DNA of 63,474 nucleotides, the filler included, from Reticulomyxa filosa (taxonomy: Eukaryota; Protista; Foraminifera), in NCBI GenBank assembly GCA_000512085.1. It is 20 parts of 20 records of this genome, joined end to end, with 100 filler letters (N's around TTAATTAATTAA, not from the genome) between each part and the next. Parts side by side here need not be neighbours in the genome. Positions count along the whole stretch, not along the records: positions 16,467 to 19,639 come from ASPP01028840.1; 19 more parts are not named here. One strand, given 5' to 3'. The notes under the pieces are model-generated. The model made no database searches, had not been told where the DNA came from, and saw only the letters and a list, made by a program, of their open reading frames with translations. A program made the translations under genes and the position numbers. This document shows positions 2,670-19,859 of the stretch, in pieces; position 1 is the stretch's first letter; each line of letters starts with the position of its first letter.

Positions 2670-3470
2670 TTATTGTCTTTCTTTTTCTTTTTCTTCTTCA
2701 ATTAACAAGTTATGATAACTTCTAACCATACTTGAAGTGATTAATTGTTTTTTGTTTAGCATTACTTCGACCATCCTAGATATCATAGTATCTTCAATAT
2801 TTATTAATTTATTGTCTACTGTTATATACCCATTACTTGTTACTTTTAGGTCGACTTCTGGTATGTTTTCGGCACTTTGGTTTTTCTTGCATTTCATATA
2901 ATATCTGTAACCTTCATCATTATATATTCTGCATAGCCATACTCTTGATTGTGTTTTGTATACTAATACTATTCCAAGTTCATCATTTTCTATTACTTCT
3001 TCTAGTGTTTTAAACCATTGCCATTGATTAGTGATGCTTGGCGTTCTGTAACAAATTGTTGATAATATTTCTTTGATTCTTGTGTGTGATTTATACATAT
3101 CTTTTTCCATCATTTCTATTATTCTTGCGTTTTCATGTTTACTGTGTTCCATTTTTGAGCTGTTTTCCCACTATCTTTTCTTAACCATGTTGGTAGAGAA
3201 TTCTAGTTCTTCTTCTTCAAAATCCTGTTTCCTACTAGATTCATTCTCAATCCAAAATTTTCTGCAGATTTCTTTTATTTCTTCATCTTCACATCTTTTT
3301 ACTTCTTCTATGCCTTTCATTTTAAATTCTATTGATGCTTCTGCTTCATCATCATCTGCATTCATATCGTAGTATGCTTCGAAAGGTTGTGCTAGCCTTT
3401 GTCTTTCTTTTTCTATAATTAGTTTATCTAAGATGTCATCATCCAATATTTCCATTTTATCTACTTCCAT
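2670..3470 (-). pseudogene. Intronless acidic orphan ORF split by one in-frame TAG (ORFs 3171-3470 and 2670-3152)
   Basis: Both ORFs are in the same frame. The junction reads MVKKR*WENSSKMEHSK. No introns and no recognisable domain. Confidence 0.45.
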
Positions 3471-3831
3471 TGGACCATGTGCTTGTAATCCTGTTGTTTC
3501 TTCATTAAATTCTGTTTGCTGTCATGATTGTATTTTCTTGTAGACTGGTCGCCATTTTATACGTATACTTTTTTTGGCTGCTACGGCTGTTCGCACTTTT
3601 TTTTTTGTTCTTTTTTATTTTTGGAGTGGATTTTTTTGTGTAGACTGGTCTACTTTAGTATACTAGTAGTTTATTTTCAGCTAAACTTTAGCCTTATGAC
3701 CCAACTAACAGTATTATTAACTAAACCACGTAGGTTTAATACTTATTATACCTGTTGGTAATAAAACTTTGAAACTAGTTGTACTTTTTTCAGAGACTGA
3801 CTCAGTCACTTTATTTTATCCTTATCCGGTC

Positions 3832-4152
3832 TTATCTACGGAATTTCGCAAGTTTTTTGCTAAATATACATTTTGTATTTTTAATTTCACAATTGTTACA
3901 GTTACATCCTGCATATTTGATGATAATCATGTTGATTTCTATATAATTGCATCTTTTTTGTATTTCTATTAATTCTTGAATTCTTTTATAATGTATTTAA
4001 TCAATCATTGAGAATTTCATGTATTCAATATATTTATTCTTTTCAATTAACAGGCATTGTTCTGTATTTAATACTTTATGGATAATGTCTTTTTCTTTCA
4101 TAATTCTTCTCTTTTCACCTTCAATTAATGTAAATGATATTTCGGTTTCCAT
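3832..4152 (-). pseudogene. About 105-aa orphan ORF with one internal TAA and a Cys cluster (mirror copy at 5274-5594, + strand)
   Basis: Manual translation: METEISFTLIEGEKRR...MKFSMID*IHYKRIQELIEIQKRCNYIEINMIIIKYAGCNCNNCEIKNTKCIFSKKLAKFRR*. Confidence 0.35.
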
Positions 4153-4252: not shown

Positions 4253-4421
4253 TGTTTTTGGATCACTATTTTCGTTTCTGTAATGTACTGTTTTTGGACC
4301 ACTATTTTCGTTTCTATAATGTACTTTTTGTTTTTGTTTGTTCTTGGATCACTATTTTCGTTTCTGTAATGTACTTTTGTTATGCATGTTCCTGGATCAT
4401 TATTTTTGTTTCCAAAGTACT
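4253..4421. repeat. Four imperfect direct repeats (core TGGATCACTATTTTCGTTTCTGTAATGTACT) inside the IR arm, mirrored at about 5005-5173
   Basis: Copies are visible near 4255, 4291, 4341 and 4389. Confidence 0.9.
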
Positions 4422-5611
4422 TTTTTTGATTATTGATTTCATTTCTATTGTGTACTTTAATTTAGATTTTAATTTATGATTTAATTTTCTTTTTATATTA
4501 TTATGTTATCACTCTTATTTATTATTACTTTTGATAAAGAATTTATTATTATTATTCTTGAATTCCTTTTTCAATATAGGTACTTTTCATATTTATAATT
4601 TCAAAAGAAAAGAAAGTCCAGTGATGAAATTAAAATATCGTCAAGCGAAGTTTGTCGATATAATAATGAAATCAATGCAGAATACTGCATTATGGGATGA
4701 ATAAATGGAGAATTGATGACTATGGCATACGAACGTGAAGCCCGCAATGACGGAAGCCGGTATGAAACCTATAGCAGAAATATTCCCAAGTAAAAATCCC
4801 AGAAAATGAACAATCTTTATTAAGAAATTATAAATATGAAAAGTACCTATATTGAAAAAGGAATTCAAGAATAATAATAATAAATTCTTTATCAAAAGTA
4901 ATAATAAATAAGAGTGATAACATAATAATATAAAAAGAAAATTAAATCATAAATTAAAATCTAAATTAAAGTACACAATAGAAATGAAATCAATAATCAA
5001 AAAAAGTACTTTGGAAACAAAAATAATGATCCAGGAACATGCATAACAAAAGTACATTACAGAAACGAAAATAGTGATCCAAGAACAAACAAAAACAAAA
5101 AGTACATTATAGAAACGAAAATAGTGGTCCAAAAACAGTACATTACAGAAACGAAAATAGTGATCCAAAAACATGCAAAAACAAAATGGAAAAATCCAAA
5201 AAAATGAACGTCTGAAAAGTTCAAACAAAGGGAAACTCCAAAATTAACTCAAAAAAATACAAGTTATATCAACATGGAAACCGAAATATCATTTACATTA
5301 ATTGAAGGTGAAAAGAGAAGAATTATGAAAGAAAAAGACATTATCCATAAAGTATTAAATACAGAACAATGCCTGTTAATTGAAAAGAATAAATATATTG
5401 AATACATGAAATTCTCAATGATTGATTAAATACATTATAAAAGAATTCAAGAATTAATAGAAATACAAAAAAGATGCAATTATATAGAAATCAACATGAT
5501 TATCATCAAATATGCAGGATGTAACTGTAACAATTGTGAAATTAAAAATACAAAATGTATATTTAGCAAAAAACTTGCGAAATTCCGTAGATAAGACCGG
5601 ATAAGGATAAA

Positions 5612-16366: not shown

Positions 16367-17052
16367 NNNNNNNNNNNNNNNNNNNNNNNNNNNNNNNNNN
16401 NNNNNNNNNNTTAATTAATTAANNNNNNNNNNNNNNNNNNNNNNNNNNNNNNNNNNNNNNNNNNNNGCTGTTGAAAAAAAGTTAATAAAGTTATTAAAAC
16501 AAAAAAAGAATGGAAAAGAAAGATAATAAAAGAAAGGTTGAGTATACCTCAACCAACACTGGGGCCGGCATTGCAAGTATGTGTCTGTTGGAAACAGAAA
16601 AACAAACAAAAAAAACTAGGTCCAAGGGGAGGAATAAAAACACACATGTTGGTACACAGACAAGCAAAGAGAAAAACAAAACAAAACAAAACAAAAAACA
16701 TAAATTCTTTCTTTCTTTTCATCCTGCAGACAATTTCCATAACTTTTTTAATTTTTTTTTCAATTTTCTTTCCATTGACCTCTGCATGCAATATGACGAG
16801 GCTCTTTCTTTTTGGCTATGTTTTTGACAAAACAAAAATGATAAAGTATTGTACAGCACACATACACAAAAACACGCTCCAAATGTTGCTTTTTTGTTTT
16901 TGTTTTCTTAATGAAACAATTTCAATTTATACCTTTTTTTTTTTAATTATCCATATCCATGTTTTTTTTGTTAGAAACGCAGTTAATTAATAATGATAAT
17001 TATTTATTAAAAAAAAAGTATGTAAAATATAACTTAACTGTGTACAGCAAAA

Positions 17053-18654
17053 ATGATCGGCCGAAAACGCCCTCACGCTGAGGGACAAAGAGAAGATGCA
17101 CCGGCTCCAAAACGTGCAAAGGTATGTATTGCACAAAACAAAAGCCAATATTTATGAGTTGAGGTACATCTATTTGTTTGGATGTTTATACATTGTATAA
17201 TAATAGATGAGTGGTGGCATATGCCATAAAGTGATGAATTTAATGGCATCATTGATGCCAATTAACTGGAGTGCAAGCCAGGCTCGAAGCGACGAAGAGC
17301 CTGCTTCAAATAGTATGGAGCCTCTGGTGAGGCATTCAGAAGTTAATCTATTTTCTTTTTTTTATTTATTCAATCAATACAACAAAGCAATCACACACAC
17401 ATGTCTATGTGCAATTTGTTCATAAATAAATCTTGTAATTATGTATAATATAAATATGTTTCATGCTATTTGTACATAGATGGCACAGGCTCCAAAGTCA
17501 GATATAGAGCCAAAGCAGCAACTGGAACAACAAGAGCAGCTTGCACAAACGGAGCAACTGGAGCAACCAGAGCGGCCAGAAAAGCGACGAAAGCATTCCA
17601 AACGCAAAGGTAAGGATCGACCGAAGGGACAGCGACGACGACGGGTTCAACGAAAATGTGAAAAGGCTACCAAAGAGCCAAAAAAAGACGACGTGGCTCC
17701 TCAGCCAATAAATAAAAAGCTGCTTGTCCTTGATATGGACAATACAATCATGTATTACAGCACTGAAGTTAGTCTTTGTCTTTTGTTATATGTGTGTATA
17801 TGTTTACATATCTAAACTATTAATACAAACAATCACATACAAATAGGAGTTAACAAACGCAGTTGGAAAAGTGGATCTATTTTTGAATGGTCGAGTCCAC
17901 AATGCATGCGTCAAGCCAAGGCCATTCCTGCAAGACTTTCTCGAGGGCTGCAGTAAATATTACGATATTATAATATTTACTGCAGCAGGAAAAAAATACG
18001 CAGACGACGTGTTGGAACTAATAGATAAGAGTCATTATATAACACGTCGATTATATAATGACTCTTTGACTCTTGACACAGAGTCTGAATTTTATAAAGT
18101 TAAATTTATTTGTGTATATGTAAATAGATATGATTTATATTTATAATTATGATAATAAATAATAGGATATTACTAAACTGGGACGGCCGATGAGTGAAGT
18201 CGTCTTCGTAGACGACAGGAAAACCAGCTGCGCGAAATTCCCGTCCAACTCCATCTGCATTGACGTGTATGCAGGTGCTGACAATGATACAGCGGTAACT
18301 TATATTTATTTTGTATGTTTGCTTGTTTAAATATTGACATTAACATAAATATAAATATAAATTACATCACAATAGCTGGTGCGACTGTTGCCATTGTTAT
18401 TGACAACATTGGCACAGGTGGATGATGTACGCACCGTGTTGGATGCGAACCAGTCTTTCCACTGGGTCTGCGACCAAGCGACGTTCGAAAACGAGTCGCA
18501 GATGCAGTTTTGTGTCTATTTTATTTTGTATAAAGTATGTATGTGTATAGCATATCAAAACACAAGCAAATAATCAACAAAATATATGTGCAAATACAAT
18601 AGATCGTGGAATAACATTTTGGAGGCAGCAGAGAAGTCCACTGGTGGCCATTAA
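17053..18654 (+). CDS. NIF/FCP1/SCP-family HAD phosphatase with a basic, low-complexity N-terminus (about 7 exons)
   Basis: KKLLVLDMDNT (DxDxT), VKPRPFLQDFL..IIIFTAA..YADDVLELID, KDITKLGRPMSEVVFVDD, NDTALVRLLPLL..VDDVRTVL. GT-AG introns; stop TAA at 18652-18654. Confidence 0.85.
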
Positions 18655-19065
18655 GGCTGAACGCTGGAGCCGGACGGAATGGAGTCGATCAACGATGCAA
18701 GCGCGAGCAATTGCCACAAAGAACCTATATGGATTGGTATGCAGCAAGAAAAAGAAGGAAGTTAGGAATAGGAAGGGGGGGGGGGGGAAAAAAGGAGGGA
18801 GGAAGGGGAAATGGAGGAGGGGGGAGAGAAGCAAAGAATGGAGCCAGTGGGGAACAGAAACCCACACAATAGACACCCACCAACAACAAACAACAAAAAA
18901 TAAATAAAAGAGTGGGGGTTATCTATAACAGATAACTTTTTTGTTGTTTGTTGTTGACGTTTTTGTCTCCGATGATATGCATCAGGACAAAAACCGAGGA
19001 AGGAAGTTGGGGAAGAGTGAGGTGTGAATGGGATAGAGTAAATGAAGGGAATATATAATGATGGG

Positions 19066-19325
19066 GTGCCTCAAGTGGAGGACACCACTACAAAACTGAA
19101 GGAGTGCGGCAATAATATATTGTTTGTCCACCTTTGGAGACACCATAACAAAACTGCAGGAGTGCATCAATGTTATGTTAGGTGCACCAAGTGGAGACAC
19201 CACCACAAATAACAGAAGGAGTGCGCCCAATGTGCATTGTCTGCACCAAGTGGAGACACCACCCAAAAACTGCAGGAGTGGCTGCAATATTTATTGTCTG
19301 CACCTGTGGAGACACCATACAAAAT
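19066..19325. repeat. Five degenerate 56-59 bp tandem repeats (core CACCAAGTGGAGACACCA..AAAACTGCAGGAGTG..CAAT..ATTG)
   Basis: GGAG(G)ACACCA anchors at 19077, 19136, 19193, 19252 and 19308. The spacing is not a constant multiple of 3. Confidence 0.9.
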
Positions 19326-19344
19326 ATTTCAGAGGCAGTCCATC

Positions 19345-19450
19345 ATGATCTCTGGTCGGGGAGATCATTGCACAAGTCAACCTTTGGTCGGGGGGTTGAC
19401 TGTGCTAATAAAGTTTAGCCTTTGGTCGGAAGGCTAATCTTGGTCGGGAG
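19345..19450 (+). other. Four consecutive hairpins sharing a TGGTCGG loop; candidate structured RNA or ssDNA element
   Basis: Stems: ATGATCTC/GAGATCAT (19345-19368), GCAC-a-AGTCAACC/GGTTGACT-GTGC (19370-19405), TTAGCCTT/AAGGCTAA (19415-19437), CTT/GAG (19439-19450). Confidence 0.8.
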
Positions 19451-19859
19451 GCTCTACACCACTCACATTTCATTGGACTTCAACTGGTCCTGGTGCGTTG
19501 AGGGGATAGAAAAAACTTACATGCGATTGCATGCAGATTCTTCCTCGTAAATAGTCCTTTCTGTTTTCCAAAAAGGAATCCCTCCACTCACTTCTTTCGA
19601 TTCTTCTCTTTCTCCTTCTTTTTTTCCTTTTTTTTTTTTNNNNNNNNNNNNNNNNNNNNNNNNNNNNNNNNNNNNNNNNNNNNTTAATTAATTAANNNNN
19701 NNNNNNNNNNNNNNNNNNNNNNNNNNNNNNNNNNNNNNNCATCACTATTATTAGCACTCTTGATGTACCCAAAGTGCAAACAAAAGCAAGTTGAAAAAGC
19801 ATATGGTTCCAAAAAAGGACATTGCAATAAATAATACAAAGAAAAGTACAAATATAAAA

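What the first reader, a model, noticed from the sequence alone, without database searches (positions are those of the whole stretch)
19345..19450. Four hairpins with different stems but the same TGGTCGG loop
Seen: four adjacent stem-loops have unrelated stem sequences (ATGATCTC, GCAC-AGTCAACC, TTAGCCTT, CTT) that are each complementary, while the loop heptamer TGGTCGG is invariant. The loop-proximal pairs are T-G, which work as G-U wobbles on the + strand but are A-C mismatches on the - strand. A weaker related hairpin, GGAC-TTCAACTG-GTCC, follows near 19475-19490. Established: a fixed loop on variable stems is how multivalent protein-binding RNAs are built (CsrB/RsmZ sponges, phage coat-protein operators). 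Inference: an undescribed structured ncRNA, 3'UTR element or ssDNA origin that presents one ligand several times. Simple tandem duplication would not preserve pairing while replacing the stems.
Basis: partly seen in the sequence, partly recalled or inferred. Interest (0 to 1): 0.8.

Follow-up and report, generated by a model that had tools for sequence, protein, structure and literature searches.

The report
Same-loop hairpins inside conserved RNA fold
Three real hairpins with unrelated stems and the same TGGTCGG loop sit at the tip of a large folded non-coding module that three copies of a phosphatase gene in the foraminifer Reticulomyxa filosa share, and this looks like an undescribed structured RNA whose repeated loop motifs change in number between gene copies.

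Summary
TGGTCGG occurs four times in 95 nt (0.14 expected). Three copies sit in the loops of perfect 8-bp hairpins with unrelated stems. The fourth copy has no stable stem. The "fifth hairpin" is not one: its right arm belongs to a conserved long-range helix.

The locus is not from an insect. It is from Reticulomyxa filosa or a very close relative, just downstream of an intron-bearing NIF/FCP1-type phosphatase gene.

Two more distant paralogous loci (L002, L003) carry a homologous downstream module:
- a long hairpin;
- GUGG-AGACA-CCAC mini-hairpins, two copies there and five here;
- a box CTTTGGGG(G/T)C, whose amplified derivative here is TGGTCGG;
- long-range helices that close the whole domain.

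The three-way consensus fold has 75 pairs, 26 of them compensatory, far beyond column shuffles. It is better on the gene's sense strand, and wobble pairs outnumber A·C mismatches 33 to 9.

Best reading (confidence about 0.45): the hairpins are a lineage-specific amplification of a loop motif at the tip of a conserved sense-strand structured RNA, in the 3'UTR or 3' flank. They were probably made by duplication and template switching and may display a GGUCG loop several times to a ligand.

There is no transcription evidence and no Rfam match, and the three hairpins have no homologues to compare. A neutral DNA-level origin stays a serious rival.

The parts
19345..19368 (+). Hairpin 1: 8-bp perfect stem ATGATCTC/GAGATCAT. 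As RNA a U.G pair closes a GGUCGG loop.
   Evidence: -11.5 kcal/mol on +, -9.7 on -
19370..19405 (+). Hairpin 2: 8-bp perfect core AGTCAACC/GGTTGACT plus an outer 5 bp with one bulged A. As RNA three U.G pairs close a GGUCG pentaloop.
   Evidence: -20.9 on +, -17.1 on -
19411..19441 (+). Hairpin 3: 8-bp perfect core TTAGCCTT/AAGGCTAA (19415-19437) plus an outer 3 bp. GGUCG pentaloop closed by U.G. An AATAAA hexamer lies just upstream at 19407-19412.
   Evidence: (I13)
19438..19452 (+). Fourth TGGTCGG copy, without a stable stem. It is a tandem duplicate of the loop and right arm of hairpin 3 (13/14). It is also a positional homologue of the conserved box CTTTTGGGGTCG in L003.
   Evidence: D5; alignment score 30 against shuffles 7.0 +/- 3.6
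19068..19330 (+). 57-59-bp tandem repeat holding five copies of box A (19075, 19134, 19191, 19250, 19306). Box A forms the mini-hairpin GUGG-AGACA-CCAC. The paralogues have two copies.
18881..18956 (+). Long hairpin: 20-bp perfect CAACAA../..TTGTTG stem with a nested GTTATCT/AGATAAC hairpin. Conserved in L002 and L003.
   Evidence: (I2)
18959..18988 (+). 5' strands of long-range helices P1 (18959-18970) and P2 (18977-18988), which close the domain.
   Evidence: several compensatory pairs between paralogues
19487..19516 (+). 3' strands of P2 (19487-19498) and P1 (19500-19516).
18655..19639 (+). Whole conserved downstream module: purine-rich tract, long hairpin, closed domain, pyrimidine-rich tract. 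It runs to the end of the piece.
17053..18654 (+). NIF/FCP1-type phosphatase gene with short AT-rich introns that all end in ATAG. The probable stop codon is TAA at 18652-18654.

Best explanation
The three hairpins are a copy-specific expansion at the tip of a conserved, heavily folded non-coding module. The module lies directly downstream of a clade of NIF-type phosphatase paralogues in Reticulomyxa filosa. It most likely acts as RNA on the gene's sense strand, as a 3'UTR or 3'-flank transcript. It has a long hairpin followed by a domain closed by two long-range helices. The tip of that domain carries short motifs: AGACA-loop mini-hairpins and a box CTTTGGGG(G/T)C. In this copy both have multiplied, AGACA hairpins from 2 to 5 and the box from 1 to 4 as TGGTCGG. 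Three of the new box copies gained perfect 8-bp stems of local sequence, so the box is displayed as a GGUCG(G) loop closed by a U.G pair. Shown here: the hairpins, the homology and structural conservation of the module, and the sense-strand bias. Inferred: the stems arose by tandem duplication plus replication template switching, and the repeated loops serve as several binding sites for one trans-acting ligand, a protein or a complementary RNA end. Such a ligand could control the fate of the mRNA, for example 3'-end processing, stability or localisation.
For: The hairpins and the motif are non-random. Organism and gene: the best protein hit is RFI_29264 of R. filosa, and its contig L001 is 81% identical over window 16467-18618, introns included; the exons hit Pfam NIF. 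L002 and L003 carry the same ordered boxes and hairpins downstream of their NIF genes. Between L002 and L003 the module gives the strongest nucleotide match (111 bits), above any exon match (51 bits or less). All three modules fold far better than shuffles, z -5.4 to -8.5. Consensus fold: -42.5 kcal/mol, 75 pairs, 26 with compensatory changes. Against column shuffles the values are -41.0 versus -5.9 +/- 2.7, and 26 covarying pairs versus 8.1 +/- 3.1 with a maximum of 16. Sense-strand bias: the minus-strand consensus reaches only -22.6, and G.U-type cells number 33-34 against 9-12 A.C-type cells. Hairpin excess is confined to this module and this gene clade and is not genome-wide. Copy 4 aligns to box B of L003, and copies 3 and 4 are a 13/14 tandem duplicate. 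Template switching is a documented source of perfect RNA hairpins (PMC8794818).
Against: No RNA data: no sequencing run was listed, so transcription, strand and 3' end are untested. Only three copies of the module are available. The closest paralogue contig (L001) ends before the module, so hairpins 1-3 have no homologue and no covariation of their own. Their stems are perfect and lack internal wobble pairs, as expected of young DNA-level palindromes. Both strands fold significantly. In L002 and L003 the box is not in a hairpin loop, so loop display is not a conserved feature. The homology of TGGTCGG to the box is plausible but not unique: MAFFT instead aligns the box to about 19331-19338. The sense-strand bias rests on non-independent cells and partly on structures predicted from that strand. 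No ligand is known.
Confidence: 0.45

Rival explanations
1. Neutral DNA-level by-product. The conserved module may be functional, but the three TGGTCGG hairpins are recent accidents of replication in a fold-back-prone, repeat-rich stretch. Tandem duplication copied the box, and intra-strand template switching copied one flank as its reverse complement, giving perfect palindromes that nothing selects for.
For: The stems are perfect and of equal length (8 bp), as young palindromes are. They are absent from L002 and L003. Copies 3 and 4 are a plain tandem duplicate. The same copy also expanded the 58-bp unit. Other paralogues have their own private perfect hairpins at the tip: L002 at 2285-2316 and 2358-2376. 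The coding exon holds 16-bp palindromes, one of them specific to the window and L001 lineage. Template switching is known to create such hairpins (PMC8794818).
Against: Three independent events would all have to centre on the same heptamer within 95 nt. The loop is invariant in four copies while the stems are unrelated. Hairpin excess is confined to a module that is otherwise under structural constraint. Every loop can be closed by a U.G pair on the sense strand.
Confidence: 0.3
2. The module is mobile or intronic DNA: a fold-back or MITE-like element, or an intron of that origin, with purine-rich and pyrimidine-rich ends that pair and internal tandem sub-repeats. The hairpins would be part of its repeat structure.
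For: Purine-rich (18749-18830) and pyrimidine-rich (19586-19639) flanks are partly complementary (I3, I8, I9, I14). The whole module forms one long fold-back. There are internal tandem repeats. Splice-site-like GT sits before the purine tract in all three copies (window 18739; GGTAAGT in L002 near 1937; L003 near 4236), and TAG sits before a conserved box in two copies (window 19549; L003 near 4789).
Against: The module has the same position and orientation downstream of three paralogues, which points to inheritance with the gene rather than insertion. The arms covary between copies instead of decaying. No further copy appears in about 26 kb of other R. filosa DNA, including three more NIF paralogues. 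A DNA-level local alignment of the two halves is not significant. No target-site duplication was seen.
Confidence: 0.1
3. A 3'-end processing element. The conserved A(A/T)TAAA hexamer followed by the G/U-rich box would be the polyadenylation signal and downstream element. The fold positions them, and the extra TGGTCGG copies are redundant downstream elements.
For: AATAAA lies at 19407-19412, 10 nt before hairpin 3. AAATAAA or ATTAAA lies 5-6 nt before the box in L002 and L003.
Against: AT-rich hexamers are frequent in DNA of 35-38% GC. Cleavage there would remove the 3' strands of the conserved helices P1 and P2 from the mature RNA. Foraminiferal poly(A) signals are not characterised. Downstream elements are not normally shown in hairpin loops.
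Confidence: 0.08
4. A single-stranded DNA origin or nick site for a rolling-circle (HUH) enzyme, with the conserved heptamer presented in hairpin loops.
For: A conserved loop on variable stems is the format of such origins. R. filosa carries Rep-like genes according to 10.1101/2022.12.15.520654.
Against: No Rep gene lies in any of the loci. The module is chromosomal and inherited with a cellular gene in three paralogues. Sense-strand wobble pairs favour RNA. Such origins have one hairpin, not three.
Confidence: 0.03

Closest known systems
Iron-responsive elements in the transferrin-receptor 3'UTR
   Same: Several hairpins in one eukaryotic 3'UTR with different stems and one fixed loop, read by one protein. 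This is established knowledge, not tested here.
   Different: The IRE loop is CAGUGN with a bulged C in the stem; here the loop is GGUCG(G) closed by U.G with no bulge. Rfam, which holds IRE models, gives no match. No binding protein is known.
Smaug/Vts1 recognition elements (CNGG-loop hairpins)
   Same: Short stems of arbitrary sequence presenting a 5-nt G-rich loop, often in two or more copies in a 3'UTR.
   Different: The loop register does not fit CNGGN: the loops read GGUCG or GGUCGG. Nothing is known of such proteins in foraminifera.
CsrB/RsmZ sponges and dispersed viral packaging signals
   Different: Those are bacterial small RNAs with GGA loops, or viral genomes. This is a nuclear eukaryotic locus beside a cellular gene, and no Rfam family matches.
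Hairpins created by replication template switching (PMC8794818; PMC10710096)
   Same: Perfect stems appear in one step as the reverse complement of adjacent sequence. Hairpin 3's left arm is absent from the paralogues, as that mechanism predicts.
   Different: That work explains origin, not function. The ancestral state cannot be reconstructed here without the closest paralogue.

Membership tests
Any Rfam 15 family | Covariance-model match at or near the gathering score | tested here: not met
   In the piece, the best hits are miRNA models at 18-22 bits against thresholds of 45-100, and none lies in 19345-19450. L002 and L003 give no hit at E of 1 or less.
CsrB/RsmZ-type protein sponge | Bacterial small RNA with many GGA motifs in hairpin loops | tested here: not met
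   The locus is eukaryotic, with an intron-bearing NIF gene of R. filosa. The loops read GGUCG(G), not A(N)GGA.
Iron-responsive element | CAGUGN apical loop and a bulged C five pairs below it | tested here: not met
   The loop sequence differs and the stems are uninterrupted. There is no Rfam IRE match.
Smaug/Vts1 recognition element | CNGGN(0-3) loop on a stem | tested here: not met
   The predicted loops GGUCG and GGUCGG do not start with C-N-G-G. Alternative registers would break the stems.
Helitron, DINE-1 or MITE terminal structure | Multi-copy element with defined termini (TC...CTRR or terminal inverted repeats plus target-site duplication) | tested here: inconclusive
   No further copy appears in about 26 kb of other R. 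filosa contigs. No termini or duplications were seen. The whole assembly could not be scanned with these tools.
Rolling-circle (HUH) origin hairpin | Nick-site loop next to a Rep gene, on a circular or mobile replicon | tested here: not met
   No Rep gene was called in the gene tables of L002, L003, L025, L026 or L027, and the module is inherited with a cellular gene.
Conserved structured cis-RNA of a 3'UTR (generic kind) | Conserved secondary structure with compensatory changes among homologues | tested here: met
   75 pairs, 26 of them compensatory. Energy and covariation lie far beyond column shuffles.
Conserved structured cis-RNA of a 3'UTR (generic kind) | Transcribed on the sense strand as part of the mRNA | not testable with these tools
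   No sequencing run was listed. The only evidence is indirect: the strand bias in wobble pairs.
Template-switch-born hairpin | One arm is a reverse-complement copy that replaces or interrupts the ancestral sequence seen in an outgroup | tested here: inconclusive
   Hairpin 3's left arm (about 7 extra nt) is absent from L002 and L003. The paralogues are too distant and the sister contig L001 ends too early.

The most novel reading that the evidence does not exclude
Foraminiferal mRNAs of this gene clade carry a previously unknown type of large, modular 3' RNA domain. A conserved scaffold (a long hairpin plus a domain closed by long-range helices) would display short pentaloop hairpins (AGACA and GGUCG) at its tip. 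Their copy number would be tuned between paralogues by duplication and template switching, setting the valency for a trans-acting factor. One example would be transport or anchoring of the mRNA in the giant reticulopodial network. Another would be pairing of UGGUCGG with an RNA 3' end that reads CCGACCA.
Probability: 0.2. Interest if true: 0.8.

Novelty: new variant of a known kind. Interest (0 to 1): 0.58.

Why it matters
Almost nothing is known about non-coding RNA or gene regulation in foraminifera, and Rfam has no family for this module. If it is an RNA, it would be a conserved, covarying, roughly 0.5 to 0.8-kb structured domain in a rhizarian nuclear gene. It would also be a natural series in which the number of displayed loop motifs differs between paralogues (2 versus 5, 1 versus 4). 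That gives a direct handle on how multivalent RNA platforms evolve and on the part template switching plays in making new hairpins. If the rival is right, the locus is still a clean example of replication-born palindromes arising inside a constrained structure, and also inside a coding exon.

Tried and rejected
- First guess, an insect locus with a Helitron or DINE-1-like repeat: dropped once the protein search placed the locus in R. filosa.
- Sequencing runs: none was listed for 18600-19639, so read laying could not be used and expression stays untested.
- Exon-length protein searches found nothing because of the length window.
- Exons were searched one at a time by reference. The joined spliced model was not built or searched.
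- Metagenome scan with two box A copies gave 21 loci, all unrelated tandem or coding repeats.
- Viral and prokaryotic genome scans with a 30-nt box A pattern gave 0 matches.
- Rfam gave no family and ARAGORN no tRNA.
- The idea that R. filosa is full of perfect hairpins everywhere was rejected. L025, L026 and L027 (14 kb) are at background.
- A plain DNA inverted repeat between the two halves of the module is not significant by local alignment. The long-range pairing shows only at helix level with wobble pairs.
- Homology between the stems of hairpins 1 and 2 (4 of 8 in a shifted register) is not above chance.
- C/D and H/ACA snoRNA, snRNA Sm-site and telomerase-RNA readings were considered from the sequence. 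They were dropped for lack of the defining boxes and because the module exists in three diverged paralogous copies.
- More distant NIF paralogues lack the module.

Full report
**What is in the sequence.**
The heptamer TGGTCGG occurs four times in the piece, all on the + strand, at 19353, 19385, 19423 and 19441. The expectation is 0.14, and no shuffle of 200 reached four.

A strand-neutral scan for perfect Watson-Crick hairpins finds three with 8-bp stems whose loops hold the heptamer:
- ATGATCTC/GAGATCAT at 19345-19368;
- AGTCAACC/GGTTGACT at 19375-19401, which extends to 19370-19405;
- TTAGCCTT/AAGGCTAA at 19415-19437, which extends to 19411-19441.

Such stems are expected 0.35 to 0.6 times in the whole 3.2 kb. 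The three stems share 0 to 3 of 8 positions pairwise. Each hairpin folds better than its shuffles as DNA on either strand, z -3.0 to -4.8.

As RNA each hairpin is 1.8 to 3.8 kcal/mol more stable on the + strand, because a U.G pair closes a GGUCG or GGUCGG loop. The fourth heptamer (19438-19452) does not fold as DNA on either strand; as + strand RNA only a weak 4-pair alternative forms (-2.8 kcal/mol). The GGAC/GTCC hairpin at 19475-19490 is at chance level.

**Where the piece comes from.**
The piece encodes an intron-bearing NIF/FCP1-type phosphatase. Exons hit Pfam NIF at 4.8e-17 and 3.4e-07, the DxDxT motif is in the exon ending at 17772, and every intron ends in ATAG.
- An exon-level HMMER search found one close relative, P0001, at 79% identity. 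P0001 is RFI_29264 of Reticulomyxa filosa, on contig ASPP01025332 of GCA_000512085.1.
- That contig (L001) aligns to window 16467-18618 at 81% identity, introns and upstream region included.
- The piece is therefore a paralogous locus of R. filosa or of a very close relative.
- L001 ends at the equivalent of about 18715, just before a purine and poly-G tract, so it says nothing about the hairpins.
- The probable stop codon of the window's gene is TAA at 18652-18654, in the frame homologous to the C-termini of L001 and L003.

I searched exons one at a time by reference. I did not build or search the joined spliced model.

**The hairpins belong to a conserved module.**
Two more distant R. filosa paralogues are L002 (gene 424-1698) and L003 (gene 3231-4062), with 52% and 47% amino-acid identity in the main exon. 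Downstream of their genes they carry the same ordered series of features as the piece:
- a purine-rich tract;
- a long CAACAA/TTGTTG hairpin with a nested GTTATC/GATAAC hairpin (18881-18956 here);
- box A, GTGGAGACACCAC, followed by AAAAAYTGYAGGAG;
- a hairpin of variable sequence;
- a second box A;
- an A(A/T)TAAA hexamer and a box CTTTGGGGGCC (L002) or CTTTTGGGGTCG (L003);
- a CAATCAC-type box;
- GGAGGGGACAAAAAA;
- a conserved TCTTTCTG...AAAGGAAT.CCTCC.CTCAC block;
- a pyrimidine-rich tract.

Between L002 and L003 the module is the best nucleotide match of the whole loci (334 nt, 70%, 111 bits), above every exon match (51 bits or less). Most introns do not align. Three still more distant NIF paralogues (L025, L026, L027) have neither the module nor any excess of hairpins. 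The hairpin richness is therefore a property of this module and gene clade, not of the genome.

**Structure of the module.**
Each of the three modules folds far better than dinucleotide shuffles:

| Module | z, + strand | z, - strand |
|---|---|---|
| Piece | -8.5 | -7.8 |
| L002 | -8.1 | -6.0 |
| L003 | -5.4 | -6.0 |

The consensus fold of the three has -42.5 kcal/mol and 75 pairs. In 26 of them at least one sequence changed on both sides and kept the pair.

The fold has two long-range helices that close the domain. In the window P1 is 18959-18970 with 19500-19516, and P2 is 18977-18988 with 19487-19498. P2 reads CAGGAC/GUCCUG here and CAAAAU/UUUUUG in L002. Box A forms a mini-hairpin, GUGG-AGACA-CCAC.

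I also made a control alignment in a script, with the window's copy-specific expansions cut out. I kept 18950-19066, 19240-19344 and 19438-19525, and left out 19067-19239 and 19345-19437. Results:

| Measure | + strand | + column shuffles | - strand | - column shuffles |
|---|---|---|---|---|
| Consensus energy (kcal/mol) | -41.0 | -5.9 +/- 2.7 | -22.6 | -3.4 +/- 2.1 |
| Covarying pairs | 26 | 8.1 +/- 3.1 (max 16) | 15 | 5.3 +/- 2.9 |

For L002 and L003 alone the + consensus is -40.1 against -10.6 +/- 3.6.

In the union of the pairs predicted on either strand, G.U-type cells on the + strand number 33-34 and A.C-type cells 9-12. Transitions in a DNA palindrome should give the two types equally often, so this bias favours selection on a + strand RNA, the sense of the phosphatase gene. 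The cells are not independent, and part of the structure was predicted from that strand. I treat this as moderate evidence.

**How the TGGTCGG copies relate to the conserved box.**
- The fourth copy and what follows it (19436-19520) align to L003's box and its downstream boxes with score 30, against 7.0 +/- 3.6 (maximum 23) for shuffles: CTT--GGTCGG.AGGCTC against CTTTTGGGGTCG.ATGCTC.
- Copies 3 and 4 are a direct tandem duplicate, 13 of 14 (D5).
- Hairpin 3's left arm needs about 7 nt that the paralogues lack between their AATAAA-like hexamer and the box.
- Hairpins 1 and 2 are extra sequence relative to the paralogues.
- MAFFT offers a second placement of the box at about 19331-19338, so the exact history is uncertain.

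In both placements the heptamer is a multiplied version of a box that is single and not in a hairpin loop in the other two copies. The same copy has five box A mini-hairpins in a 57-59-bp tandem array (19068-19330) where the others have two. This paralogue has thus raised the copy number of both apical motifs.

**Mechanism.**
Shown: three real hairpins with an invariant loop; a conserved, covarying, sense-biased fold around them; amplification of two apical motifs.

Inferred:
- The new stems arose by tandem duplication plus replication template switching, which copies a flank as its reverse complement and yields perfect stems in one step (PMC8794818). The other paralogues also have private perfect hairpins at the tip, L002 at 2285-2316 and 2358-2376. 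This shows that hairpins turn over there.
- The repeated GGUCG loops are binding sites for one ligand.

I give the whole reading 0.45. The main rival (0.30) keeps the origin and drops the function: young palindromes that nothing selects. In its favour, the stems are perfect, have no homologues, and the box is not loop-displayed in the paralogues. Against it, three separate events centre on one heptamer within 95 nt, and all four loops are identical while the stems are unrelated.

Lesser rivals:
- A fold-back element or intron (0.10). GT at 18739 and TAG at 19549 have counterparts in the paralogues. However, position, orientation and arm covariation point to inheritance, and no other copies were seen.
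- A polyadenylation element (0.08).
- A rolling-circle origin (0.03).

**Comparison with what is known.**
No Rfam family matches. There is no tRNA. No paper in the library links Reticulomyxa with hairpins or palindromes of this kind. In the way it may work it is closest to multi-hairpin 3'UTR elements such as the transferrin-receptor IREs or Smaug recognition elements. It fails their defining loop features and is not a member. I file it as a new variant of a known kind: a conserved structured cis-RNA with repeated loop motifs.

**Limits.**
- No sequencing run was listed, so read laying was not used and expression is untested.
- The R. filosa assembly could not be scanned by DNA.
- The metagenome scan returned only unrelated repeats, and the viral and prokaryotic scans returned nothing.

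Noticed in passing
window 17947-17986 and 18027-18066; L001 4284-4323 and 4364-4403; L003 3330-3365: Two perfect 16-bp-arm palindromes lie inside the main coding exon of the phosphatase gene, encoding GCSKYYDIIIFTAA and KSHYITRRLYNDSL. The first is kept in L001 (14 bp) and L003 (15 bp, with a T>C / A>G compensatory pair) and is eroded in L002. The second is kept in L001 with a G>A / C>T compensatory pair (Ser>Asn on one arm, silent on the other) and is absent from L002 and L003. In each case the less conserved half of the peptide is the reverse complement of the conserved half.
   Followed up: partly
window 18881-18956; L002 about 2060-2140; L003 about 4370-4450: A long hairpin with a 20-bp perfect low-complexity stem (CAACAA.. 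/ ..TTGTTG) and a nested GTTATCT/AGATAAC hairpin is conserved in all three paralogous modules.
   Followed up: partly
window 19068-19330: A 57-59-bp tandem repeat holds five copies of the box GTGGAGACACCAC, predicted to form a GUGG-AGACA-CCAC mini-hairpin. The paralogues have two copies. The box is invariant across all three loci.
   Followed up: partly
window 18959-18994: A perfect 9-bp local hairpin, GTTTTTGTC ... GACAAAAAC, competes with the conserved long-range helices P1 and P2. It looks like a local copy of the distal GGGGACAAAAAA box.
   Followed up: no
window 18739 and 19549; L002 about 1937; L003 about 4236 and 4789: Splice-donor-like GT (GGTAAGT in L002) sits before the purine tract, and TAG sits before a conserved TCTTTCTG box. 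The whole module could be an intron. This cannot be tested without RNA data.
   Followed up: no
window 17053-18654: Every intron of the gene ends in ATAG and has no pyrimidine tract, and the donors vary (GTATGT, GTGAGG, GTTAGT, GTTAAA, GTAACT, GTATAA). The annotated model of the paralogue RFI_29264 reads through intron-like AT-rich sequence at its 3' end and is probably wrong there.
   Followed up: partly
window 16484-16760; L003 1788-2039: The upstream non-coding region is also alignable between distant paralogues (68-74% identity), so conserved 5' elements probably exist as well.
   Followed up: no
L003 4136-4178: An 11-bp perfect hairpin, GGCTACGTACT ... AGTACGTAGCC, lies just after the stop codon of the L003 paralogue. 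Its loop contains ATGGAGTC, a box also present after the stop codons of the window (about 18680), L001 and L002.
   Followed up: no
L004-L024: The 12-mer GTGGAGACACCA recurs in many unrelated metagenomic tandem repeats, several of which look like coding repeats. They have no relation to the foraminiferal module.
   Followed up: yes
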